From Chrysemys picta bellii (Eukaryota): a stretch of 64,000 nucleotides of DNA. The stretch spans positions 2,046,001 to 2,110,000 of the forward strand of contig NC_088794.1 in assembly GCF_011386835.1 (NCBI RefSeq). Direction: 5' to 3'. Positions within the stretch are counted from its first letter, which is position 1, and every line of letters begins with the position of its first letter. Positions 2 to 64,000 of this stretch are shown piece by piece. Under the pieces are notes generated by a model. The model was not told the DNA's origin. It worked only from the letters and a program-made list of their open reading frames with translations, and did not search any database. The position numbers and the translations under genes were made by a program.

Positions 2-4477
<4,476 letters not shown>

Positions 4478-20470: not shown

Positions 20471-20845
20471 CTGGGTTGCCTGGCAGCCAGTGGCTGAGAT
20501 GTGACCCCCCCCAGCTTCCCTTGGGAGCCCAGTGACCGGAGCCCCCAGCAGGGTCAGTTGGGGCGAGCCGCAAGATGGCCGCCACCTCGGCGTGAACATC
20601 AGGGGCCACTGCCAAGATGGCTGCCATGGCATGACAAGCATGGCACGAGCCCCAAGATGGCCGCCAGGTTGGCGTGAGCCCCAAGATGGCCGCTGTGTTG
20701 GCGTGACTGGCAGATGGCGATCCCCAAGATGGCCGCCAGGTTGGCGTGAGCCCCAAGATGGCCACCGGGTTGGCGCAACTGGCCGACCTCTGGGATGGCT
20801 GCCACACTGGCATGACTGGCAGGTGACGAGCCCCAAAATGGCCAC
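20453..20845 (+). repeat. Tandem array of YY1-consensus motifs (about 29-bp unit GGCGTGAGCCCCAAGATGGCCGCCAGGTT)
   Basis: AA(G/A)ATGGC-type cores at about 20453, 20571, 20613, 20653, 20682, 20725, 20754 and 20834, plus a degenerate copy at 20793. Confidence 0.8.
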
Positions 20846-22027: not shown

Positions 22028-23509
22028 CTGCCGGGGGTGGGGCTGGCAGGCAGTGGGACCCTGTCCCCTTCCCAGCATCCTCTGGGCTGGCGCTGGGATC
22101 CCGCCGCACCAAGGACGCTCCAGCCCGGATACCAGCTCAGGGGGCTGAGATGGGGGAGGAATACAGTGACGGACCAGTGGGGTCAGCCCATGGGGCACAG
22201 GGCCCCAGGGAATGGGAATGGGGCCCGTGGCTTTCAGGATCTCAGCACAGCCGCCTCCATCACACCTATGGCTCCACCCTCACGGGGGGCTGGCAAAGCA
22301 GGAAATACCCCCTTGTGTTGCCCGGAGGGGGCAGGACCTACAGCTGGGCAGGGGGGAGGGAAGGGTCTGTCCAGTGTTTCTGCTGCAATAAAAGTGTTTC
22401 TCGCCCTCTGGCGTCTCCTTTCTTCTGCCCGGTTCATGCTGAGCTGAGGCCTCGAGCTCCCCCCAGCCAGGCCCCCTAGTGCCAGACACTCTGACCCCAA
22501 CGAGGCTTGGGACTCTTGTAGGCCCTACATAAACACCACCTCTGCAGATCCTACCCCAGAGGGGTCTCCCTTAGAGCCTGGCCGGGAGCTCTGCCACAGG
22601 GCTGTGTGTGTCTGTGAATCGGGCCTTCCCGAGGCTCAAGAGTGTTTTGCAGACATGGCCACCCTGGGCACTCAGTCGGCAGGATCCTGTTCCTCCAGGA
22701 GGCGGGACTTCCTGTTACACCCACAATACAAGGGTGTGTGAATCCTGGGTATTCTGCTATGAGAGGTAAGGACTTGCTGTATTGTCATCAGGGCTGGAGG
22801 TGGGACTTCCTGTATTGTTATCGAGGCAGGCGGTGGGACTTCGTTACCCATGCAGGAGGAGGCGGGACTTCCTGTATCGCCTCAGGAACCTCCTTTGCCC
22901 GCAGGCTGTTCCTCCCAGGAGAAGGTGTGACTTGTTGTTTTGTTGTTCCCTGCTGGGTCATGTCCTCACAGGAAGTGGCCCCTCTTCAGAGGCAGGGCTT
23001 TGTGTCCCATTGTCCAATCAGGGCAGAATGCTGGCATTAAGGGGCGGGGCCTCCGCAGGAAATGCATCCCCCCTCGCCTGAGGCCTCCTGCCCCAAGGTG
23101 CTCGGGTCAGGGGTGTGTGTGATGTGGGGAGGGTGTGGTCCCGGCTCAGAGCCCAGACCTGCCCCATCCACCCCCCACCAGCTGGGCAAGCGGGGCGGGG
23201 GCAGGGACGAAGCAATTGTGGGGGAGGGAAGGGTGTCGAGATCCCTCTAGGCCCCAGTCCTGAGTTGGGGTGGGCCGGGCCCTTTGCTACAGCACAGCTT
23301 GTGGTGGGGAGTTCCCTGGGGCCCACCCCACAACCAGGCCGCCCTCCCCCTCAAGACACCACCTGAGCCAGCCGGCTCCTGCCCCCCAAACCCAGACCCC
23401 CACGTGGGGAACAGAGACAAAACCCAGCAGACCCCGCTCTCCCCCTGTGCCTTTACCCAGAGCCGTTCCTCACCCTCCGGACGCCTGGGTCCATCCGCTC
23501 TGCTGGTGC

Positions 23510-24210
23510 CCGACCCGCAGCCCCTGCTAGCCCAGCCCTGGGTTCCCCCGCAGCCCTGCTGGTGCCCCTCAATCCTGACCCACAGCCCCTGCCAGCGCAG
23601 CCCCCCCCAGCTCTGCCAGTGCCCCTCACTCCCGACCCGCAGCCCCTGCCAGCCCAGCCCAGCCCCCCCCCAGCTCTGCCAGTGCCCCTCACTCCCGACC
23701 CGCAGCCCCTGCTAGCCCAGCCCTGCCCCCCCCAGCTCTGCCGGTGCCCCTCACTCCCGACCCGCAGCCCCTGCCAGCCCAGCACAGCCCCCCGCAGCTC
23801 TGCCAGTGCCCCTCACTCCCGACCCACAGCTCCTGCCAGCCCAGCCCTGCCTCCCCCCAGCTCTGCCAGTGCCCCTCACTCCCGACCCGCAGCCCCTGCC
23901 AGCCCAGCCCAGCCCCCCCCCAGCTCTGCCGGTGCCCCTCACTCCCGACCCGCAGCCCCTGCCAGCCCAGCCCAGCCCCCCCCCAGCTCTGCCGGTGCCC
24001 CTCACTCCCGACCCGCAGCCCCTGCCAGCCCAGCCCTGCCCCCCCCAGCTCTGCCGGTGCCCCTCACTCCCGACCTGCAGCCCCTGCCAGCCCAGCCCTG
24101 GGCTCCTCCCAGCTCTGCCAGTGCCCCTCACTCCCGACCTGCAGCCCCTGCCAGCCCAGCCCTGCCTCCCCCCAGCTCTGCCAGTGCCCCTCACTCCCAA
24201 CCCGCAGCCC
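23510..24210. repeat. Minisatellite family A array
   Basis: Tandem CCAGCTCTGCC(A/G)GTGCCCCTCACTCCCGACCCGCAGCCCCTGCCAGCCCAGCCC units. Confidence 0.95.
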
Positions 24211-24580: not shown

Positions 24581-25144
24581 CCATTGTTACCTCCAACGCA
24601 GCCGGGGCCGGGGGGGCCCCAGCGTATATAGGGCCCTGGGCCGGTGCGAAGGCACCAGCGCTGGGCCGGCCCGCCGGGGAGCCAGGAACACCCCTTTTCC
24701 TTCCCTCACCGCCGGGGAGCCACCCCTGGCCCCCCAGAGCCCAGCTGAGTGGAAGCAGGCAAGCGCCAGGTAAGGGGGCACCCCACAGCCTGAAGGAGTG
24801 TGCAGGGGGCAGAGGCTGGGTCAGTAGAGGGGATGGGTGAATTGGGGGGCGGGCTAGTGGGGTAATGTTTGGGGTGACAGGGCCATGGTGGGAGGAGTGG
24901 CACAGGGTTTTGGGGGGGGTCTGACGGGAGAGTGGGTGGGGGGATTGTGGGGGCAGCGGGGGATGGAAAGGGGGACGCATTGGGGTCGTGGATGTAGAGT
25001 GCAGGGGGAATTGGGGTCAGTTGGATTCTGGGGGCAGGAGATTGTTGGGGTGCCGAGGGATGCTGGGTTCCCTGACAAAAGTGGGGGGTGCTTGGAAAGC
25101 CCCTGCCCCACAGAGGTGATGCCAGCCTCCCCCTCAAATGTGGG

Positions 25145-25870
25145 GGGCTGTGGGTCGGGAGTGGGGGGCACCAGCAGGGCTGGGGGGGCAGGGGCTGCAG
25201 GTCGGGAGTGGGGGGCACCGGCAGAGCTGGGGGGGAGGGGTTGGGGGGGCTGCAGGTCGGGAGTGGGGGGCACCGGCAGGGCTGGGGGGGCAGGGTGCTG
25301 CAGGTCGGGAGTGGGGGGCACCGGCAGAGCTGGGGGGGAGGGGTTGGGGGGGCTGCAGGTCGGGAGTGGGGAGCACCAGCAGGGCTGGGGGGGCAGGGGC
25401 TGCAGGTCGGGAGTGGGGGGCACCGGCAGAGCTGGGGGGGAGGGGTTGGGGGGCTGCAGGTCGGGAGTGGGGGACACCGGCAGGGCTGGGGGGGCAGGGT
25501 GCTGCAGGTCGGGAGTGGGGGGCACCGGCAGGGCTGGGGGGGGGAGGGGCTGTGGGGGCTGCAGGTCGGGAGCGGGGGTCACCGGCAGGGCGGGGGGGGA
25601 GGGGCTGTGGGGGCTGCAGGTCGGGAGTGGGGGGCACTGGCGGGGGGGGGGCAGTGGCTGCAGGTCAGGAGGGGGGGCACCGGCAGGGCTGGGGGGGGAG
25701 GGGCTGGGGGGCTGCACGTTGGGGGGGGAGGGGCTGGGGGGCTGCACGTCGGGGGGGGGCCACCGGCAGGGAGGGGCTGGGGGGGCTGCAGGTCGGGAGG
25801 GGGGGGGGCACCGGCAGGGCTGGGGGGGGGCAGGGGCTGCACGTCGGGGGGGGGGGGGCACCGGTAGGGC
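25145..25870. repeat. Minisatellite family A variant array (G-rich on + strand)
   Basis: Tandem GGCTGCAGGTCGGGAGTGGGGGGCACCGGCAGGGCTGGGGGG units. Confidence 0.95.
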
Positions 25871-34051: not shown

Positions 34052-34551
34052 NNNNNNNNNNNNNNNNNNNNNNNNNNNNNNNNNNNNNNNNNNNNNNNNN
34101 NNNNNNNNNNNNNNNNNNNNNNNNNNNNNNNNNNNNNNNNNNNNNNNNNNNNNNNNNNNNNNNNNNNNNNNNNNNNNNNNNNNNNNNNNNNNNNNNNNNN
34201 NNNNNNNNNNNNNNNNNNNNNNNNNNNNNNNNNNNNNNNNNNNNNNNNNNNNNNNNNNNNNNNNNNNNNNNNNNNNNNNNNNNNNNNNNNNNNNNNNNNN
34301 NNNNNNNNNNNNNNNNNNNNNNNNNNNNNNNNNNNNNNNNNNNNNNNNNNNNNNNNNNNNNNNNNNNNNNNNNNNNNNNNNNNNNNNNNNNNNNNNNNNN
34401 NNNNNNNNNNNNNNNNNNNNNNNNNNNNNNNNNNNNNNNNNNNNNNNNNNNNNNNNNNNNNNNNNNNNNNNNNNNNNNNNNNNNNNNNNNNNNNNNNNNN
34501 NNNNNNNNNNNNNNNNNNNNNNNNNNNNNNNNNNNNNNNNNNNNNNNNNNN
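34052..34551. other. Assembly gap (500 N, placeholder size)
   Basis: Run of exactly 500 N. Confidence 1.
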
Positions 34552-36404
34552 GCAGAAAGTGGCCACACGATGGCGACAGACCCGAGAAAATGCGAACACA
34601 AGACGGGGCTGTTGGCACAGGCCTGACCTGGAGCCCCGGGAACAGCTCCCGAACCCAGGCGTCCGGGCCCCTCCCAGCCCCCCCCCCCCCCTAACCCACC
34701 AGCCCCGCTCCCCTCCCAGAGCCGGGAGAGAACCCAGGCGTCCGGGCTCCCAACCCCCCCCCCCCCCAACCCACCAGCCCCGCTCCCCTCCCAGAGCCGG
34801 GAGAGAACCCAGGCGTCCGGGCTCCCAACCCCCCCCCCCCCCAACCCACCAGCCCCGCTCCCCTCCCAGAGCCGGGAGAGAACCCAGGCGTCCGGGTTTT
34901 CTGTGCCCAGCGACTCCCGGCTCCCCCCCCCCTCCCCTGACTCATCCCCTCGTCACAAAAGCCCCGAATTTAAGAATTTCCCTTTGGCAAAGGCCCGGCT
35001 CGCGCAGGCCAGGGAGTTAACCCTTTCCGAGCCGGCCCCCCTGGGCATGGCCCTGCCCCCCAACTGCCCCCGCCTCTGCGGGAGGGGGGGAGACCATCTC
35101 AGCTGGGAGCCGAACCAGCACGCCTGGGTTCTTTGCAAGGGGAGTGGGGGCTGGTGGTTTAGAGCAGGGGGGCTGGGAGCCCGGACTCCTGGGTTCTCTC
35201 CCTGGCTCTGGGAGGGGAGTGAGGGCTGGTGGGTTAGAGCAGGGGGGGGCTGGGAGCCCGGACGCCTGGGTTCTCTCTCCCTGACTCTGGGAAGGGAGTG
35301 GGGGCTGGTGGGTTAGAGCAGGGGGGGGGGGGCTGGAGGCCGGACGCCTGGGTTCTCTCCCTGACTCTGGGAAGGGAGTGGGGGCTGGTGGGTTAGAGCA
35401 GGGGGGGGCTGGGAGCCCGGACGCCTGGGTTCTCTCCCTGGCCGGACTGCGGCTGTTTCTATAAATAGCCCTTTTTCTCGATCTGTCTCATTCCTTCGCC
35501 CCGCTGGGTTTCTCCTGGGTTGCGTCAGGCCGGAGCATTCCTGCGGCGTGACGCGGCTCGGCCCGGCGGCCCCACGTCCCTGCTCCGCCCCCACCTCCTG
35601 CCTGGCACGGGTCGCGTCCTGCTGCGAGCTTCCCCCAGCAGTGCCCCCACACGGGTGTCTCCCCAGAGCGCTGCGAGCTTCCCCCCAGCAATGCCCTCCC
35701 CAGTGCTGTGCGCTTCCCCTCAGCAGTGCCCCACCCGGGGGTCTCCCCAAAGCGCCGCAAGCTTCCCGTCAGCAGTGCCTCCAGCCAGGGGGTCTCCCCA
35801 GAGTGCTTCGAGCTTCCCCCAGCAGTGCCCCCACCCGGGGGTCTCCCCAGAGTGCTGTGAGCTTCCCCCAGCAGTGTCCCCTCGGTGGAGGCTCCAACCT
35901 TTGGCACTTCCCTGCAACAGTGACCAGCCAAGGTGTTGGTGCTGCGAGCTTCCCCCCAGCAGTGCCCTCAGCTTCTTGGCTCCGGCTGGCTCCGGTCCTG
36001 GACTCCCAGGGCGGCTGAGTCACTGGAGGGGGAGGCTGGGGGGTGAAGCAATGGGTCAGGAATGCAGGAGCTGGTGGGGTGAAACTGAGCAGGGGGTGAG
36101 TCAGAGGTGGGGGGGATGGGAAGGAAGGAAGGAATGCAAAGTAGAAAGCGAGGGAGTGAGGCAGAGACTGCAAGGGAAGAGGGGGAATGGGAAAAAGACC
36201 GAGAGAGAGACCAGGAATGAGAAAGGAAGGGAAAGAATTGGAGTTTTTCCCAGGAGGGAAGAAGGGAATGAGAAAAGGAAGGAGAGAACGAAAGAAGGGA
36301 CCGAAGGATGAAGAGGAAGAAAGGGGTGAGAAATGGAGGGGCAGAGACAAAGGCCTCACCCCCTGCCCCCAGGGAGAGCCGGGGGAGGGGACACGGGGCT
36401 TTGC

Positions 36405-36419: not shown

Positions 36420-38060
36420 CGGCTCCGATCCAGTTCCAAGCTCAACGTTGAATTTCAAAATTAGAATTTTATTGTAATTCTCTTGAACCCGCAAAGTCCG
36501 ATTCCCTCGGGGCCAGGCGGGTTCTTACCCGAGCCGCACGTGAAACGCGGTTCGTGCCCACGACATAAATAGACACATGGGGGGGGGGACGGGGAATTTA
36601 GGTGGATGCCCCAAAAATGGCACCTCCAAACCCTGTCACTTCGGTGGCCCTGCCACCAGTGAAGCAGCTCATGGAAGACAGCAGGTGACTTATTCAGAGC
36701 TAGAAAAGGACCCGGACCCCCCCCCCTCACGATACAGCCCCCCCCCCCGAGAGCCGGGGAGAGAACCCAGGAGTCCTGGCTCCCAGCCCCCCTGCTCTCA
36801 CCCACCAGACCCCCCCCTCCCAGAGCTGGGGAGAGAACCCAGGAGTCCTGGCTCCCAGCCCCCCTGCTCTAACCCACCAGACTCCCCCCTCCCAGAGCTG
36901 GGGAGAGAACCCAGGAGTCCGGGCTCCCAGCCCCACCCCTGCTTTGAGAATTGAACTTTTCTCCATCACATTCACACTGTCCCTATATACAGATAATTCA
37001 CTCGTGTTCCAGGCCACAAACTGGTATTTCTGGGGTTGGGGAAAAAAGGGGGATTCTGGGGAGACACGGGGGGGCAGAGGGGATAGACTGGAGGGGATAA
37101 ATGCCCCCCCAGCAATACTGACCCCTTTAGATTTGTGCCCCCCCACAGGTTTTGAGGTACCATTGGTTGACCCCCCCCACATCCCGAGGTTAAAAAGTTT
37201 CTTGGTGTTATTGGGCCTGGAATAGAGAGTGTCTGATTTTGGGGGGCACCGATCGGGGGGGCAGCTCTACTCAAGATTTAAAGGTACCCTAGACTGCCTC
37301 TAGTCGACCCCAAATCTTCCGCTGGTGTGCTCCCCAAGGGACCCCACGTTCCTCGCCAGCAGCCCAAGATCTGAGCTTTAGGGTCACAGGGAGGTTCCCC
37401 CCTTCCTAAGCCGGGGAAGTGCAAATTTTCAATGCTTCCGGAGAGGCCCCAATATGGGGCATTAATGGGGAACCCCCCCCCAAAGCTGTGCAAAATAGAA
37501 CATCCCCTCCCGATTCCAAGAGTCCTTTTCGGGGAGCGGTGAAAATCAGGGTTCGGGGGGACGTTGGTCAAAGGCTGCTGACGGGGCTCCTGCACGATTC
37601 GAGGGTTAGTGGCTCCAATTCTGCCCCACGGGTGCCCAGACTGGATACGTCACCTGCCAGAGAGAGAGAACGAACGAATAAACCAACCTCACAGCTGGGC
37701 TAGCAGGGGCTGCGGGTCGGGAGTGAGGGGCACCGGCAGAGCTGGGGGGGCAGGGCTGGGCTAGCAGGGGCTGCGGGTCGGGAGTGAGGGGCACCGGCAG
37801 AGCTGGGGGGGGACAGGGCTGGGCTGGCAGGGGCTGTGGGTCGGGAGTGAGGAGCACCGGCAGAGCTGGGGGGCCAGGGCTGGGCTGGCAGGGGGCTGCG
37901 GGTCGGGAGTGAGGGGCACCGGCAGAGCTGGGGGGCCCAGGGCTGGGCTAGCAGGGCTGCGGGTCGGGAGTGAGGGGCACCGGCAGAGCTGGGGGGGGCA
38001 GGGCTGGGCTAGCAGGGGCTGCGGGTCGGGAGTGAGGGGCACCATGGATGTCTCTTACCA

Positions 38061-41000
38061 TCAATCTATCAGCGACTCTTCGCCCGAGTGGCCTCCAGTC
38101 TCTTCTATGGGGGCTGGAAAGGAAACGCCGGGACAGTTACTGGGGGTGTCGGGGAGGATGTGGGGGGGAGTCTGGGGAGGTCAGGGGGAAGAAATGGGGG
38201 AAGTTTGGGGGGCTCTGGGAGGCCCATGGGGAGAATCAGGGTGATGGGGGCAGAAGGAGAGAGGGGGATTGGGTCTGGGATTCGGGGAGAGGAAGATCCC
38301 AGGAGTGTGGGGGGGGTGGATGTGTGGGGCAGGGGATGGGGGTTCAGGGGTTTTTTGGGCCCAGGGTGGCTCTGGGACTCGGGGAGAGGAAGATCTGGGG
38401 GGCGGAGGACAGGGTGGATGTGGGGGGCAGGGGATGGGGGTTCAGAGTTTTTTGGGCCCAGGGTGGCTCTGGGATTTGGGGAGAGGAAGATCTGGGGGCC
38501 GGGGCAAGGGGTGGATGTGGGGGGCAGGGATGGGGGTTCAGGGAGTTTGGGGCCCAGGGTGGCTATGGGATTTGGGGAGAGGAAGATCTGGGGGCCAGGG
38601 CATGGGTTGGAAGTGGGGGGCAAGGGATGGGGATTCAGGGTGTTTGGGGCCCGGGGTGGCTCTGGGACTCGGGGAGAGGAAGATCTGGGGGACGGAGGAC
38701 AGGGTGGATGTGGGGGGCAGGAGATGGGGGTTCAGGGTGTTTGGGCCCAGGGTGGCTCTGGGACTCGGGGAGAGGAAGATCTGGGGGGTGGAGGACAGGG
38801 TGGATATGGGGGGCAGGGGATGGGGGTTCAGGGTGTTTGGGGCCCGGGGTGGCTCTGGGATTTGGGGGGGGGGCGGGTCACTCACTGGTGAATTTCTCCC
38901 TCTTGCGGCAGCGGGCCCATAGCAGCGCCCCCCCCACCAGGCCGAGCACAGCGACTCCCCCTACGGCGCCCCCCACGGCCAGCCACAGCCAGGCATCCTG
39001 GGGCTGGGGTTCGCCACCTGGGGGCAGAGAGGAGAGAGCTGGGTTAATAGGGGGAGCGGCATCCCAGCGCCTCCACTGGCCCCCGAGTCACCCCAGAGCG
39101 GCCACCACCCAGAGCCTCCCCAAGAATCCCCCTCCACTCAGCCCCACACCCCAACGCCCCCTCCCACCATCCTGGAGACCCCCCTCCTGCCTCCGTCCAC
39201 CCCCCAGATCCACCCTCTGCCCCCCACCACCTTGGCCAGAGCCCCAGTGCATTGTGGGTGTTGGGTGGGGACGGGACGTACACGTGGCGCAGAAAATCGT
39301 TTTTCGTGCGCTGGAGGCAGATGGTGCAGTCCATGCACTTGTCCAGGTCGGGGCTCCAGGACTGCCCCCCGGGCAGGAGGGACCTGTGCGGGTGGGGGGG
39401 AGAAGGGAACAAGGGACCAGGGGACGGAAGAATGAATAAACCCCAGTGAAAGAGGGGAAGGAGGGAAGGGAAAAGCAGAGACACGAAAGCAAACGACAGC
39501 GGGAACCAGCGAAGGAAGGTGAAAGGCACGCAAGGAACAAAGGGACCAGCAGAAAAGGAGGAATAACCCCCCACCCCGAGCAGGCGAAAGACGGGGTGGG
39601 GGTAGAGAGGGAGAAAGGAGGAATGGGGAAAGGGGGAGAAATGGAAGGAGAGAGGCAGAAGGGAGGGAGGGGAGCGACGGGAAGGAGAAAAGAGAGAAAA
39701 CAGAAAGTTAAAATCTGTGAAAGGTATAAACCTGACCAGGGACCCTGTAACTTCGATGCCCCCAGGCTCCCCCCGTGGGCTCTGATCCCCCCCCCATGAC
39801 GAGGGGCCTATTTCCAGCTGGTGTACGTCAGGGGCAGATGGAGCCGGGGGTCACATTTCACCCCGAAACCCAACCCCTGCAGTGCCAGGTTAGCAGGGCA
39901 GGGGCTGCGGGTCGGGAGTGAGGGGCACCGGCAGAGCTGGGGGGGGCAGGGCTGGGCTGGCAGGGGCTGCGGGTCGGGAGTGAGGGGCGCCGGCAGAGCT
40001 GGGGGGGCAGGGCTGGGCTAGCAGGGGCTGCGGATCGGGGAGTGAGGGGCACCGGCAGAGCTGGGGGGGGCAGGGCTGGGCTAGCAGGGGCTGCGGGTCA
40101 GGAGTGAGGGGGCACGGGCAGAGCTGGGGGGGGGCAGGGCTGGGCTAGCAGGGGCTGCGGGTCGGGAGGAGTGAGGGGCACCGGCAGAGCTGGGGGGGGC
40201 AGGGCTGGGCTAGCAGGGGCTGCGGGTCGGGAAGTGAGGGCACCGGCAGAGCGGGGGGGCAGGGCTGGGCTCGCAGGGCTGCGGGTCGGGAGTGAGGGGC
40301 ACCGGCAGAGCTGGGGGGGGAGGCAGGGCTGGGCTGGCAGGGGCTGCGGGTCGGGAGTGAGGGGCACCGGCAGAGCTGGGGGGGGGGGCAGGGCTGGGCT
40401 CGCAGGGGCTGTGGGTCGGGAGTGAGGGGCACGGGCAGAGCTGGGGGGGGCCCAGGCCTGGTGCTGGCAGGGGCTGCGGGGTCGGGAAGTGAGGGGCACC
40501 GGCAGGGCTGGGGGGGATCTTCTGGAGAGGTCACCTTCTGGGTGGGGGAGGATAATTGAGGGTTCATGGGGCAGACACTGAGGGGCGGGGCTCAGAGCGG
40601 GGGGCAGACAGTTTTGCAGACACGGGGGATCCGATCTTGGGGTGTACGGGGGGTGGGGGGATTTGGGGGAGCAGCAGAATTGTTTCGGGGGAGGGAATTT
40701 GGGCGGATTGGGGGGCAGCGGATCCTGGGGGTCTGGGCGGCCGTGGGGGATGGGGGGGTGCAAGGGGCAGAATGTGTCCCCCCCCCCGGACAATCCGGAA
40801 TTGCTCATTAGCCCCTCCCCCATCTGATGTCACGTCACGAGCCCGGTGACTCACCCCCCGCCCCCACCCCCCGGCATATCCCATGAATGAAATCACCGGC
40901 CCCGCCCCCTGCCGCGCACGTGGAGGGGCTGCAGGGAATCGGGGGGTCCCCAGGCCCCGCCCCCTCCCCTAGGCCCCGCCTTCGGGAAGGAGCGATTTGG

Positions 41001-62943: not shown

Positions 62944-64000
62944 ATGGCCGCAATTTTTTCTGGCGTCTCGCGGCTCTTCCAGCCGGCCTTGGGGTGCCTC
63001 TCGACGGAAACCAGCTGCCAAGGCCTGACGCCCTGGTACTTCCTCGTTGGCCTGCGCCTGGTGACTCTGGTCCTGGCCAGCGGGCCCTGGGACTCGGACC
63101 AGTCCATCCTAGCCTGCGACTGGCTCTCGGAAAAGGCCGGGCCCCAGACCTTCTGCAATGCACTCTGCTACAACCAGCACTTCCCGGCCCCCATGTTCAG
63201 CATCTGGGGCTTCGCCTTCCTGGCCACCATCTTCACCATCGGGCTGATGCAGCTCGTACGGAGCAGGAACGTCCAGGTGTTTGTAGTGGACAGGGACGTG
63301 GAGGGGTCGGCACCTGCTGGAACATCCAATATGGCCGCCGGACCAAACGTGGCCACCGATGTCAAGCCGCTCGAGGCAGCCAATATGGCCGACAACGCCA
63401 AGCCACTTGACCAATCCAAGACGACCGCTGGCGAGCCCTGGCGCCACCTTGTCTTTGGCCTGTGTGTGGGGCTGCTCCTGGCCACAGAGATGAGCTTCCT
63501 GTGGGCTGTGCTGGCCCTGCAGATGCCGGCCATGTTGGCGACCTCCTTCCGCTGCGTCCCAGGGAGCCCAGCCTGCCCCTCGGTCCTGGAGTGCACCCTC
63601 CCGGGCCGGGCCGACAAACGCATGGCGCTGGCCACCTTGGCCTTCACAGCCTGTGTCAACATGGCCGCCTGCCTGGGTTATGGGATTGTGGAGCTGAGAA
63701 ATGGGGCCTGTTGCCAGGGGCAACAGGGGGCGGGGGAAGGAGAGGGCTGTGGGGAGTGTGGGGGTGAGGGGGACTGTGGGGTGTGTGGAAGGAGCTGTGA
63801 GGGGGAGGCAGAGGCTGTGGGGGGAGTGGAGGGGGAAGGGGCGATTGTGGTGGAGAGGGGGGGCTGTGGGGAGGGTGGGGGTGAGATGGGGGGCTGTGAG
63901 GTGTGTGGAAGGGCCAGGGCAGAGGAGGAGAGTAGAGGGGACAGGGGGGATGAGTGGGGAGGGGGTATGGAGATGCAGGAGATAGATGGAGGGAAGGAGG
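62944..64000 (+). CDS. Highly divergent connexin-like four-TM protein; ORF open past the window end (at least 352 aa)
   Basis: Polypyrimidine tract then CAG|ATG at 62944, with no stop through 64000 (so it is absent from the ORF track). TM1 with Arg (LRLVTLVLASGPWDSDQS), E1 C..FCNALCYNQHFP..W, TM3 with Glu (LLATEMSFLW), E2 FRC..ACPSVLEC..GRADK, TM4 (..GYGIVEL). These mirror connexin FRIL...WGDEQS..C..C...CYD..FP...W and FxC..PCP...C..SRPTEK. Confidence 0.85.
   Translation, partial: MAAIFSGVSRLFQPALGCLSTETSCQGLTPWYFLVGLRLVTLVLASGPWDSDQSILACDWLSEKAGPQTFCNALCYNQHFPAPMFSIWGFAFLATIFTIGLMQLVRSRNVQVFVVDRDVEGSAPAGTSNMAAGPNVATDVKPLEAANMADNAKPLDQSKTTAGEPWRHLVFGLCVGLLLATEMSFLWAVLALQMPAMLATSFRCVPGSPACPSVLECTLPGRADKRMALATLAFTACVNMAACLGYGIVELRNGACCQGQQGAGEGEGCGECGGEGDCGVCGRSCEGEAEAVGGVEGEGAIVVERGGCGEGGGEMGGCEVCGRARAEEESRGDRGDEWGGGMEMQEIDGGKE

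What the first reader, a model, noticed from the sequence alone, without database searches (positions are those of the whole stretch)
62944..63700. Intact, highly divergent connexin-like gene with non-canonical extracellular cysteine spacing
Seen: four hydrophobic segments and six extracellular cysteines spaced C58-X12-C71-X3-C75 (E1) and C-X6-C-X5-C (E2). The same spacing appears in the upstream paralogue wherever it is undisrupted. The N-terminus (MAAIFSGVSRLFQPALGCLSTETSC) is unlike the usual MxDW/M-NW start. Established: connexins have C-X6-C-X3-C and C-X4/5-C-X5-C, and GJE1/Cx23 has only four cysteines. Inference: an unrecognised connexin subfamily whose longer loops may prevent normal docking (hemichannel-only or homotypic-only). 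The gene is missed by the supplied ORF track because it has no stop in the window.
Basis: partly seen in the sequence, partly recalled or inferred. Interest (0 to 1): 0.88.

Follow-up and report, generated by a model that had tools for sequence, protein, structure and literature searches.

The report
Divergent zeta-type connexin gene in turtle
This is a real, intact and selectively constrained connexin (channel-forming membrane protein) gene of a turtle; it belongs to an almost unstudied branch of the connexin family, related to zebrafish gjz1, that multiplied in reptiles and has unusually long outer loops.

Summary
An open frame starts at 62944, directly after a splice acceptor, and runs off the window end. 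It has four helices and Cys58-x12-Cys71-x3-Cys75 and Cys204-x6-Cys211-x5-Cys217. It passes Pfam Connexin (38.7 bits, cut-off 31.3). Its model matches only solved connexins among the top 50 PDB hits.

It is not a wholly unrecognised subfamily. An exhaustive profile search finds only 41 relatives, one named gjz1 (zeta connexin, reported in zebrafish in 2022). A tree splits the zeta group 100/100 into gjz1 proper and a sister lineage of sharks, gar, coelacanth, caecilian and all sauropsids. Spotted gar has one gene of each lineage, 3.9 kb apart. The window gene lies in the sister lineage, with alligator and lacertid orthologues.

Against the hawksbill orthologue, dN/dS is 0.21 (0.13 in the membrane/loop core). 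The upstream copy (57498-58324) is a pseudogene here but intact in sea turtles.

Long loops are shared by all 16 sauropsid members. An N-glycosylation sequon in loop E1 occurs in 23 of 25 non-sauropsid members and is lost in this gene.

No expression evidence was obtained for this gene. Whether it docks or acts only as a hemichannel is untested.

The parts
62930..62943 (+). Polypyrimidine tract plus CAG splice acceptor directly before the start codon. This implies a non-coding upstream exon, which was not located.
   Evidence: Sequence ctctctctccgcag|ATG. The same context precedes copy 1 and the hawksbill orthologue. In a related member the acceptor directly before the ATG is shown to be used: mRNA contig L002 against genomic contig L001, intron L001:605-1638, GT..AG.
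62944..64000 (+). Coding sequence of the zeta-type connexin ('copy 2'), 352 codons, open at the window end.
62947..62997 (+). N-terminal helix (residues 2-18). It begins with the MAA(I/V) motif seen in most rows of both zeta lineages.
   Evidence: DSSP on the AF2 model; alignment A2; sequences.
63028..63093 (+). TM1 (residues 29-50); W31 is invariant in the family.
63094..63192 (+). Extracellular loop E1 with Cys58, Cys71 and Cys75 (C-x12-C-x3-C). It has no N-x-S/T sequon.
   Evidence: PDB phmmer aligns it to Cx32 E1 with a 6-residue insertion between the first two cysteines.
63193..63285 (+). TM2 (residues 84-114).
63286..63432 (+). Cytoplasmic loop (residues 115-163). It is low-confidence and disordered, built of degenerate NMA(A/D)-type repeats, and fast-evolving.
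   Evidence: pLDDT 45-58; dN/dS 1.4 on few sites; repeat-rich loops in relatives.
63433..63537 (+). TM3 (residues 164-198).
63538..63606 (+). Extracellular loop E2 with Cys204, Cys211 and Cys217 (C-x6-C-x5-C), modelled as a beta hairpin.
63607..63720 (+). TM4 (residues 222-259).
63721..64000 (+). Start of the cytoplasmic tail, Cys/Gly/Glu-rich with several CxxC pairs. It continues beyond the window.
   Evidence: Frame kept against hawksbill, 89% nucleotide identity, net indel a multiple of 3. The lacertid orthologue has its whole CDS, including a similar tail, in one exon.
57498..58324 (+). Tandem paralogue ('copy 1'), a pseudogene in this genome. It keeps the E1 sequon CNWT and the same Cys spacing.
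   Evidence: Compared with intact hawksbill copy 1: CAG>TAG at codon 77 (57729-57731), 2-bp deletion at codon 89 (about 57767), 8-bp deletion at codon 229 (about 58184), 94% nucleotide identity.

Best explanation
The ORF is the main coding exon of a functional connexin gene in a turtle genome. It belongs to the zeta group of connexins. Within that group it lies in a lineage sister to gjz1 proper, here called zeta-beta. Zeta-beta is present in cartilaginous fishes, gar, coelacanth, caecilians and all sauropsids. It was duplicated into at least three or four paralogues before turtles, crocodilians and squamates split. This gene is the 'type B' paralogue, with orthologues in hawksbill turtle, alligator and lacertid lizards. 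By homology it should assemble into a hexameric connexin channel with an N-terminal helix, four membrane helices and two disulfide-stapled outer loops. It differs from classical connexins exactly where two hemichannels dock. E1 has 12 instead of 6 residues between its first two cysteines, and E2 has 6 instead of 4-5. My committed reading, which is inference: it works mainly as an undocked plasma-membrane channel (about 60% of the cases in which it is functional), and less likely as a strictly self-docking junction channel. Shown here: family membership, fold, lineage, intactness, purifying selection and gene neighbourhood. Inferred: hexamer formation, channel activity, docking behaviour and expression. 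The confidence given (0.7) is for the identity-plus-functionality part; the docking part alone would be about 0.4.
For: Connexin identity:
- Pfam PF00029 scores 38.7 bits against a cut-off of 31.3.
- The AF2 model has pLDDT 78 and pTM 0.70.
- The top 50 Foldseek PDB hits are all connexins, probability 1.00, TM-score by target 0.58-0.78.
- All six loop cysteines are invariant across 14 diverse family members.

Lineage:
- A profile of four reptile members searched against 1.84 billion representatives gives only 41 hits at E<=1e-3. None of those whose names were looked up is a classical connexin orthologue.
- Hits include Hypanus 'gjz1'.
- The 41-row tree splits gjz1 proper from zeta-beta at 100/100. 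Sauropsids form a 100/100 clade. The window gene groups with hawksbill copy 2, Alligator XP_025049729.1 and Podarcis at 96/92.
- Gar carries one gene of each lineage in tandem. Latimeria also has both.

Functionality:
- Against the hawksbill orthologue there are 260 ungapped codons, 91% amino-acid identity and dS 0.20.
- dN/dS is 0.21 overall and 0.13 in the TM/loop core. Fisher p = 9e-9 for the deficit of non-synonymous changes.
- The frame is intact in both turtles, including the tail.
- A family member is transcribed and spliced at the homologous acceptor.

Oligomer:
- A three-copy model scores ipSAE 0.50 against a best control of 0.01. Runs share at least 67% of contacts and partner pLDDT is at least 60.
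- The tool's calibration: the mark was reached by 21 of 30 solved homodimers and 0 of 23 single chains. The tool warns that the pass may come from memory of solved connexins.
- The interface is E1/TM2 against TM1/E2/TM4 of the neighbour.

Docking loops:
- All 16 sauropsid rows have E1 spacers of 12 or more residues, and 15 of 16 have E2 C-x6-C-x5-C (the bird-like row P0029 has C-x7-C-x4-C). Most other zeta members have C-x7-C-x3-C and C-x4-C-x5-C.
Against: - There is no evidence that this gene is transcribed. The four runs laid give contigs that cross the acceptor colinearly and cover the non-coding flank at the same low depth, so they look like DNA.
- The immediate neighbour copy is dead in this genome.
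- The locus corresponds to a repeat-rich chromosome end in hawksbill.
- Selection was measured on a single species pair.
- The stop codon and true C-terminus lie outside the window. The hawksbill annotation (311 aa over 2.1 kb) implies a spliced tail that I could not reproduce.
- The ancestral E1 sequon, which would argue for a non-docking channel, is absent from this copy, so the hemichannel reading rests on loop length alone.
- No classical connexin sequences were available for the tree, so its root is unknown.
Confidence: 0.7

Rival explanations
1. The gene makes true intercellular gap-junction channels, probably only with itself or close paralogues. Loss of the ancestral E1 glycan site in the type B paralogue, together with co-ordinated lengthening of both loops, produced a new and private docking surface.
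For: The sequon is present in 23 of 25 non-sauropsid zeta members but lost in this gene, its hawksbill orthologue and Podarcis. E1 and E2 lengthened together in the sauropsid stem. The Cys2-Cys3 segment of E2 keeps the classical length of 5 and the conserved Pro (CPSVLEC). All six cysteines are kept.
Against: The inserted residues lie between the first two E1 cysteines. From established Cx26 and Cx46/50 structures (own knowledge) this is the inner docking wall. The alligator type B orthologue still has the sequon, so its loss is not a defining step of the paralogue.
Confidence: 0.25
2. The ORF is a non-functional or decaying copy that merely remains open, or it is silent, in a rapidly turning-over subtelomeric gene cluster.
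For: The adjacent paralogue is a pseudogene with three lesions. There is no RNA evidence. The cytoplasmic loop evolves at dN/dS about 1.4. The region is full of minisatellites.
Against: dN/dS is 0.13 in the core at dS 0.20, with p = 9e-9. There are 352 or more open codons in a frame that is also kept in hawksbill. Orthologues are intact in alligator and lacertids. Invariant family residues are all present.
Confidence: 0.1
3. It is a fast-evolving orthologue of a classical connexin (for example GJB3, GJB5 or GJA4, as some automatic names say) or of GJE1/Cx23.
For: RefSeq gives relatives names such as 'gap junction beta-3 protein-like', 'alpha-4' and 'beta-5'. The best solved-structure sequence match is Cx32.
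Against: That match is weak (E 0.006, 19.5 bits). The exhaustive profile search reaches zeta members at 55-425 bits, and no classical connexin orthologue among the hits that were named. The published gjz1 analysis places the group outside all other connexins (PMC9073686).
Confidence: 0.03

Closest known systems
gjz1 / Cx26.3 (gap junction protein zeta 1), first reported in zebrafish by Lukowicz-Bedford et al. 2022 (PMC9073686)
   Same: Same divergent zeta group. Both have the MAA(I/V) N-terminus, six loop cysteines, an E1 spacer usually longer than the classical 6, a short protein core and a single coding exon preceded by an acceptor. Profile searches started from either side reach the other before any classical connexin.
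   Different: The window gene is not an orthologue of gjz1 proper. It falls in the sister lineage (100/100 split), and the two lineages coexist as tandem genes in gar. It has longer E1 and E2, a repeat-built cytoplasmic loop, a long Cys/Gly/Glu-rich tail and no E1 sequon.
Classical connexins with solved structures (Cx26/GJB2, Cx32/GJB1, Cx43/GJA1, Cx46/50, Cx36)
   Same: Same fold and topology, with an N-terminal helix and an E2 hairpin. Pfam Connexin membership. The modelled lateral protomer interface uses E1/TM2 against TM1/E2/TM4.
   Different: Only 10-16% identity. E1 is C-x12-C-x3-C rather than C-x6-C-x3-C, and E2 is C-x6-C-x5-C rather than C-x4,5-C-x5-C (canonical signature as stated in PMC6858305). 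The N-terminus lacks the usual MxDW-type start.
GJE1 / Cx23
   Same: Another outlying, little-studied connexin that disturbs family trees (PMC7914757).
   Different: GJE1 has only four loop cysteines (background knowledge); this protein has six. No sequence affinity was detected in any search.
Pannexins (functional analogy only)
   Same: Four-pass channel proteins. In pannexins, N-glycosylation of an outer loop prevents docking (PMC8769644 abstract). Most zeta connexins carry a conserved sequon in E1 at the docking face.
   Different: Unrelated family. The window gene itself has lost the sequon, so the analogy applies to its relatives, including the upstream paralogue, rather than to it.

Membership tests
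Connexin (Pfam PF00029) | Sequence matches the family HMM above the curated cut-off | tested here: met
   38.7 bits against gathering score 31.3, E 1.2e-9, residues 19-243 on profile positions 12-216 of 225.
Connexin (Pfam PF00029) | Four-helix connexin fold with N-terminal helix and E2 hairpin | tested here: met
   AF2 pLDDT 78, pTM 0.70. The top 50 Foldseek PDB hits are all connexins, probability 1.00.
Connexin (Pfam PF00029) | Three conserved cysteines in each extracellular loop | tested here: met
   C58, C71, C75 and C204, C211, C217; invariant in alignment A2.
Connexin (Pfam PF00029) | Canonical spacing C-x6-C-x3-C (E1) and C-x4,5-C-x5-C (E2) | tested here: not met
   C-x12-C-x3-C and C-x6-C-x5-C. 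The canonical signature is as stated in PMC6858305. Curators have used this criterion to exclude sequences (PMC7914757). It describes the classical subfamilies and does not define the fold.
Connexin (Pfam PF00029) | Assembles into hexameric hemichannels | tested here: inconclusive
   Three-copy model: ipSAE 0.50, best control 0.01; runs agree in at least 67% of contacts; partner pLDDT at least 60. The tool warns that a pass may come from memory of solved connexins. A hexamer exceeds the size limit.
Connexin (Pfam PF00029) | Two hemichannels dock into an intercellular channel | not testable with these tools
   This needs paired-cell electrophysiology or a structure.
Zeta connexins (gjz group) | Closer to named gjz1 proteins than to any classical connexin | tested here: met
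   The exhaustive profile search returns 41 proteins. These include Hypanus 'gjz1' and members of the gjz1-proper lineage, and no classical connexin orthologue among the hits that were named.
Zeta connexins (gjz group) | Orthology to gjz1 proper (zebrafish type; named gjz1 in Amia, Astyanax and Paramisgurnus) | tested here: not met
   The 100/100 split separates gjz1 proper (17 rows) from the lineage holding the window gene (24 rows). Gar has both in tandem, and Latimeria has both.
Zeta connexins (gjz group) | N-x-S/T sequon between the first two E1 cysteines (a group trait found here, not a published criterion) | tested here: not met
   It is absent from the window gene (CDWLS). It is present in 28 of 41 rows, including turtle copy 1 (CNWT).
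GJE1 / Cx23 | Only two cysteines per extracellular loop | tested here: not met
   Three per loop.

The most novel reading that the evidence does not exclude
Vertebrates have a second ancient zeta connexin gene (a 'gjz2') that arose by tandem duplication beside gjz1 before bony fishes diverged. Both lineages were ancestrally N-glycosylated on E1 at the docking face, so they acted as obligate single-membrane channels, a connexin counterpart of pannexins. Sauropsids lost gjz1 proper, multiplied gjz2, lengthened both loops and repeatedly lost the glycan site, giving channels with new docking or gating properties. The window gene would be one of these.
Probability: 0.3. Interest if true: 0.75.

Novelty: new variant of a known kind. 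Interest (0 to 1): 0.55.

Why it matters
Connexin censuses used for nomenclature and evolution list 20-26 genes per vertebrate group. They deliberately dropped sequences lacking the classical cysteine signature (PMC7914757). This locus shows that the dropped material includes a constrained, ancient lineage. That lineage has members from sharks to reptiles and a reptile-specific expansion.

The changes sit in the loops that decide whether and with whom a hemichannel docks. Most relatives also carry a conserved glycosylation sequon there. The group is therefore a natural test of what makes a connexin junctional or not.

The finding also flags annotation problems. Adjacent paralogues are fused into single gene models, and names such as beta-3, alpha-4 and beta-5 are misleading. 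The name gjz1 is applied across two different lineages.

Tried and rejected
- **Expression.** Both run searches and the single read-laying run gave no usable RNA evidence. The runs guessed as RNA behave like low-coverage DNA. One GT..AG joint (61837 to 62751, one contig, side 21, in a repeat) was dismissed as a repeat artefact.
- **Word-index search with alignment A2**. It returned only three proteins. Its one useful result was a rodent member (Peromyscus).
- **Pfam scan of ten long ORFs elsewhere in the window**. It found nothing except a weak VWA exon. Those ORFs are minisatellite read-through.
- **Hawksbill gene model.** I tried to reproduce the 311-aa model as a two-exon structure, and no GT/AG solution was found.
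- **5' UTR exon.** The exon seen in L001/L002 has no detectable counterpart in the window or in hawksbill.
- **Earlier findings.** Look-ups by place and by words returned nothing.
- **Classical connexin outgroup.** No such sequences could be obtained as session sequences, so the zeta tree is unrooted and the 'outgroup to all connexins' statement rests on PMC9073686.
- **Considered and rejected.** An antisense ORF was rejected, because the minus-strand ORFs at 62264-63723 have no homology support. GJE1 or classical orthology was also rejected (see rival explanations).

Full report
**1. Observation**

The window holds an ATG at 62944, directly after ctctctctccgcag. The frame stays open for 352 codons to the last base of the window. 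The mechanical ORF list does not show it because it runs off the end.

E1 has C58-x12-C71-x3-C75 and E2 has C204-x6-C211-x5-C217.

A second copy lies at 57498-58324 on the same strand. It has the same acceptor context and the same E1 spacing. Its reading frame is broken.

**2. It is a connexin**

- Pfam Connexin (PF00029) matches residues 19-243 at 38.7 bits, above the gathering score of 31.3.
- Sequence similarity to solved connexins is marginal. The best is Cx32, E 0.006. That alignment places a six-residue insertion between the first two E1 cysteines.
- An AlphaFold2 model built on a 14-sequence family alignment has pLDDT 78 and pTM 0.70. It shows an N-terminal helix, four long helices, a short E1 helix and an E2 hairpin. 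Only the cytoplasmic loop is disordered.
- The first 50 Foldseek hits in the PDB are all connexins (Cx46, Cx26, Cx43, Cx32, Cx50). Probability is 1.00 and identity is 10-16%.
- A three-copy model gave ipSAE 0.50 against a best control of 0.01. Runs share at least 67% of contacts and partner pLDDT is at least 60. In the tool's calibration the mark was reached by 21 of 30 solved homodimers and 0 of 23 single chains. The contacts run between E1/TM2 of one protomer and TM1/E2/TM4 of the next. The tool warns that such a pass can come from memory of solved connexins, so I count it only as consistency.

**3. Genome and locus**

The closest database protein to the query is a 278-aa 'unnamed protein product' of sea turtles. 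In Dermochelys it is XP_043373022.1, 'uncharacterized protein LOC122460756'. It is only 49% identical to the query. It is, however, the orthologue of the upstream broken copy, at 94% nucleotide identity. The window therefore comes from a turtle.

In the hawksbill assembly the locus lies a few kilobases from a chromosome end. The gene order there is:

- a Sushi-VWA-Trypsin gene (complement factor B/C2 architecture) on the minus strand,
- then connexin copy 1,
- then a second connexin gene.

Window 46.6-64 kb is colinear with that region. The exception is a 2.4-kb insertion at 58770-61153. The second hawksbill gene is the orthologue of the finding, with 91% amino-acid identity over 260 ungapped codons.

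**4. Is it functional?**

- Against the hawksbill orthologue, dS is 0.20 and dN/dS is 0.21.
- dN/dS is 0.13 in the transmembrane and loop core and about 1.4 in the short cytoplasmic loop.
- The deficit of non-synonymous changes has Fisher p = 9e-9.
- The Cys/Gly/Glu-rich tail keeps its frame between the two turtles despite indels.
- The hawksbill ORF goes on to a (L/V)(L/I)RGD(V/I/W)E motif. That motif is also found near the C-terminus of the lacertid and snake relatives.
- In Podarcis the whole 408-codon CDS, tail included, is one exon.

By contrast, copy 1 of this genome carries a CAG>TAG change at codon 77, a 2-bp deletion at codon 89 and an 8-bp deletion at codon 229, relative to the intact sea-turtle gene.

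I obtained no direct expression evidence for the window gene. The runs flagged 'RNA?' give contigs that cross the acceptor colinearly and cover the non-coding flank at the same low depth, so they look like DNA.

One family member is demonstrably transcribed and spliced. Contig L002 matches genomic contig L001 in two blocks, 1-321 = 271-604 and 320-1187 = 1637-2509. It skips a GT..AG intron whose acceptor sits directly before the ATG. This supports the inferred gene structure of a non-coding exon 1 with the coding exon starting at the ATG.

**5. Which connexin?**

A profile of four reptile members was searched exhaustively against 1.84 billion representative proteins. It found only 41 proteins at E<=1e-3. 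Names could be looked up for 20 of these representatives; several are known only from unnamed run assemblies. None of the named ones is a classical connexin orthologue. They come from:

- turtles, alligators, lacertids and rattlesnakes,
- a caecilian, coelacanth, sturgeons, gar and a cichlid,
- sharks and rays,
- monotremes.

A later search added a deer mouse. Several GC-rich representatives (P0029, P0041, P0045) look avian by composition, but their source organisms were not looked up. One ray protein is named 'gjz1'.

The literature holds one description of gjz1/Cx26.3. [quoted passage not shown] Mikalsen et al. had noted that such connexin-like genes 'might constitute another subfamily'. They left them out, along with any sequence lacking the proper cysteine signature (PMC7914757). 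No other paper in the library treats the group.

**6. Two zeta lineages**

A search from the sturgeon protein recovered gjz1-named proteins of bowfin, loach and tetra. It also recovered bichir, gar, coelacanth, salamanders and a frog. Gar and coelacanth thus each have two different zeta genes.

In gar the two genes lie 3.9 kb apart on the same strand.

A maximum-likelihood tree of 41 rows, with the variable loop removed, splits into two groups with 100/100 support:

- gjz1 proper, 17 rows, including mammals;
- a second lineage, 24 rows: coelacanth, gar, four cartilaginous fishes (including the ray 'gjz1'), caecilian and all sauropsids.

Sauropsids form a 100/100 clade containing several paralogue groups. 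The window gene groups with hawksbill copy 2, Alligator sinensis XP_025049729.1 and Podarcis at 96/92.

In Alligator sinensis a type A gene (P0053, the partial Alligator sinensis counterpart of P0014) is followed 6.5 kb downstream by the type B gene, P0015. This is the same order and strand as in turtles.

The tree has no classical connexin outgroup, so its root is not known. The age of the duplication rests on the coexistence of both genes in gar and coelacanth.

**7. The loops**

The long spacings are not peculiar to this gene.

- All 16 rows of the sauropsid clade have 12-20 residues between the first two E1 cysteines. Fifteen of them have C-x6-C-x5-C in E2; the bird-like row P0029 has C-x7-C-x4-C.
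- Most other zeta members have C-x7-C-x3-C and C-x4-C-x5-C.
- The classical signature is C-x6-C-x3-C and C-x4,5-C-x5-C (PMC6858305).

A second feature emerged. An N-x-S/T sequon sits between the first two E1 cysteines, usually directly after the first (CNxT).

- It is present in 28 of 41 rows.
- It is present in 23 of 25 non-sauropsid rows of both lineages; only the monotremes lack it.
- It needs a minimum of four changes on the tree.

Classical connexins are described as not glycosylated (PMC6858305). In pannexins, N-glycosylation prevents junction formation (PMC8769644 abstract). From solved Cx26 structures (own knowledge), the Asn after the first E1 cysteine is a docking contact. I therefore infer that ancestral zeta connexins are glycosylated and do not dock. 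This is untested.

The window gene has CDWLS at this place and no sequon anywhere in E1 or E2. The same holds for its hawksbill orthologue and for Podarcis. The neighbouring copy 1 (CNWT) and the alligator type B gene keep the sequon.

**8. Mechanism and verdict**

The best-supported reading is a functional subunit of a hexameric connexin channel, of a sauropsid paralogue of the zeta-beta lineage. Docking behaviour cannot be derived from sequence.

- The six-residue insertion at the E1 docking wall and the descent from probably non-docking ancestors favour an undocked channel.
- Loss of the glycan site and the joint lengthening of both loops leave room for a private, homotypic docking surface.

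The subfamily has been seen before (gjz1), and relatives are in RefSeq as uncharacterised loci. The lineage to which this gene belongs, its tandem origin beside gjz1, its reptile expansion and the sequon pattern appear undescribed in the searchable literature. I rate it a new variant of a known kind, of moderate interest.

Noticed in passing
window 57498-58324 (+): Tandem connexin paralogue that is a pseudogene here (TAG at 57729-57731, 2-bp deletion about 57767, 8-bp deletion about 58184). It is intact (278 aa) in six sea-turtle species, so it was lost in this lineage only.
   Followed up: yes
window about 46600-55020 (-), VWA exon about 52790-52885: Exons of a complement factor B/C2-like gene (Sushi-VWA-Trypsin in the hawksbill annotation). 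It is colinear with the hawksbill chromosome end. One intron is filled by a 62-bp minisatellite that creates a 482-codon false ORF.
   Followed up: partly
window 1875-2704, 23509-24210, 25140-25859, 37694-38043, 39898-40516, 42637-44192, 51910-52784, 55283-55638: One GC-rich minisatellite family of about 62 bp (core GGGGCTGCGGGTCGGGAGTGAGGGGCACCGGCAGAGCTGGG) recurs at eight or more sites in both orientations. It accounts for most long ORFs of the window.
   Followed up: partly
window 34651-34896, 35140-35440, 36738-36934, 42047-42322, 49268-49699, 54930-55081, 56487-56800: A second dispersed repeat with a 75-bp unit (GGGCTGGGAGCCAGGACTCCTGGGTTCTCTCCC...) occurs in short tandem arrays in both orientations.
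   Followed up: no
window 58406-58625 and 20646-20783; cytoplasmic loops of the connexins (63286-63432, 57840-58050): A 36-bp repeat with core CCAAGATGGCTGCC lies just downstream of the pseudogene. The same core encodes the (K/N)MAA repeats that build the cytoplasmic loops of sauropsid zeta connexins, with tens of copies in alligator and in the bird-like sequences. The loops seem to grow by minisatellite expansion. The core also resembles a YY1-type site (own knowledge, untested).
   Followed up: partly
window 58770-61153: A 2.4-kb stretch between the two connexin copies is absent from hawksbill. In all four runs laid its depth is 10 to 100 times that of the flanks, so it is probably a transposable element insertion.
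   Followed up: partly
window 63721-64000; hawksbill L003:13898-14539; Podarcis P0020; Alligator P0015: Type B paralogues share long cytoplasmic tails rich in Cys, Gly and Glu (and His in alligator) with many CxxC pairs. Hawksbill, lacertids and snakes share a (L/V)(L/I)RGD(V/I/W)E motif near the C-terminus. Its function is unknown, and metal binding or a docking site for a partner are guesses.
   Followed up: partly
L005/L006 (Lepisosteus oculatus CM082495.1, about 16.007-16.013 Mb): Spotted gar has gjz1 proper (250 aa) and a zeta-beta gene (216 aa) as tandem neighbours, 3.9 kb apart on the same strand.
   Followed up: yes
L001:605-1638 against L002: A run-assembly contig (SRR12656982) is a spliced mRNA of a sauropsid type A zeta connexin. 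It has a 5' UTR exon of at least 321 nt, a 1034-nt GT..AG intron, and a coding exon starting at the ATG. The organism and tissue are not known to me.
   Followed up: yes
database entries XP_075773464.1 (Pelodiscus, 616 aa), XP_059587281.1 (Alligator mississippiensis, 1261 aa), P0018 (793 aa): These models fuse two adjacent zeta connexin paralogues into one protein. Automatic names across the group are inconsistent (beta-3, beta-5, alpha-3, alpha-4, gjz1), and 'gjz1' is applied to members of both lineages.
   Followed up: partly
window 34052-34551: A 500-base run of N (assembly gap or masked). It was left untouched.
   Followed up: no
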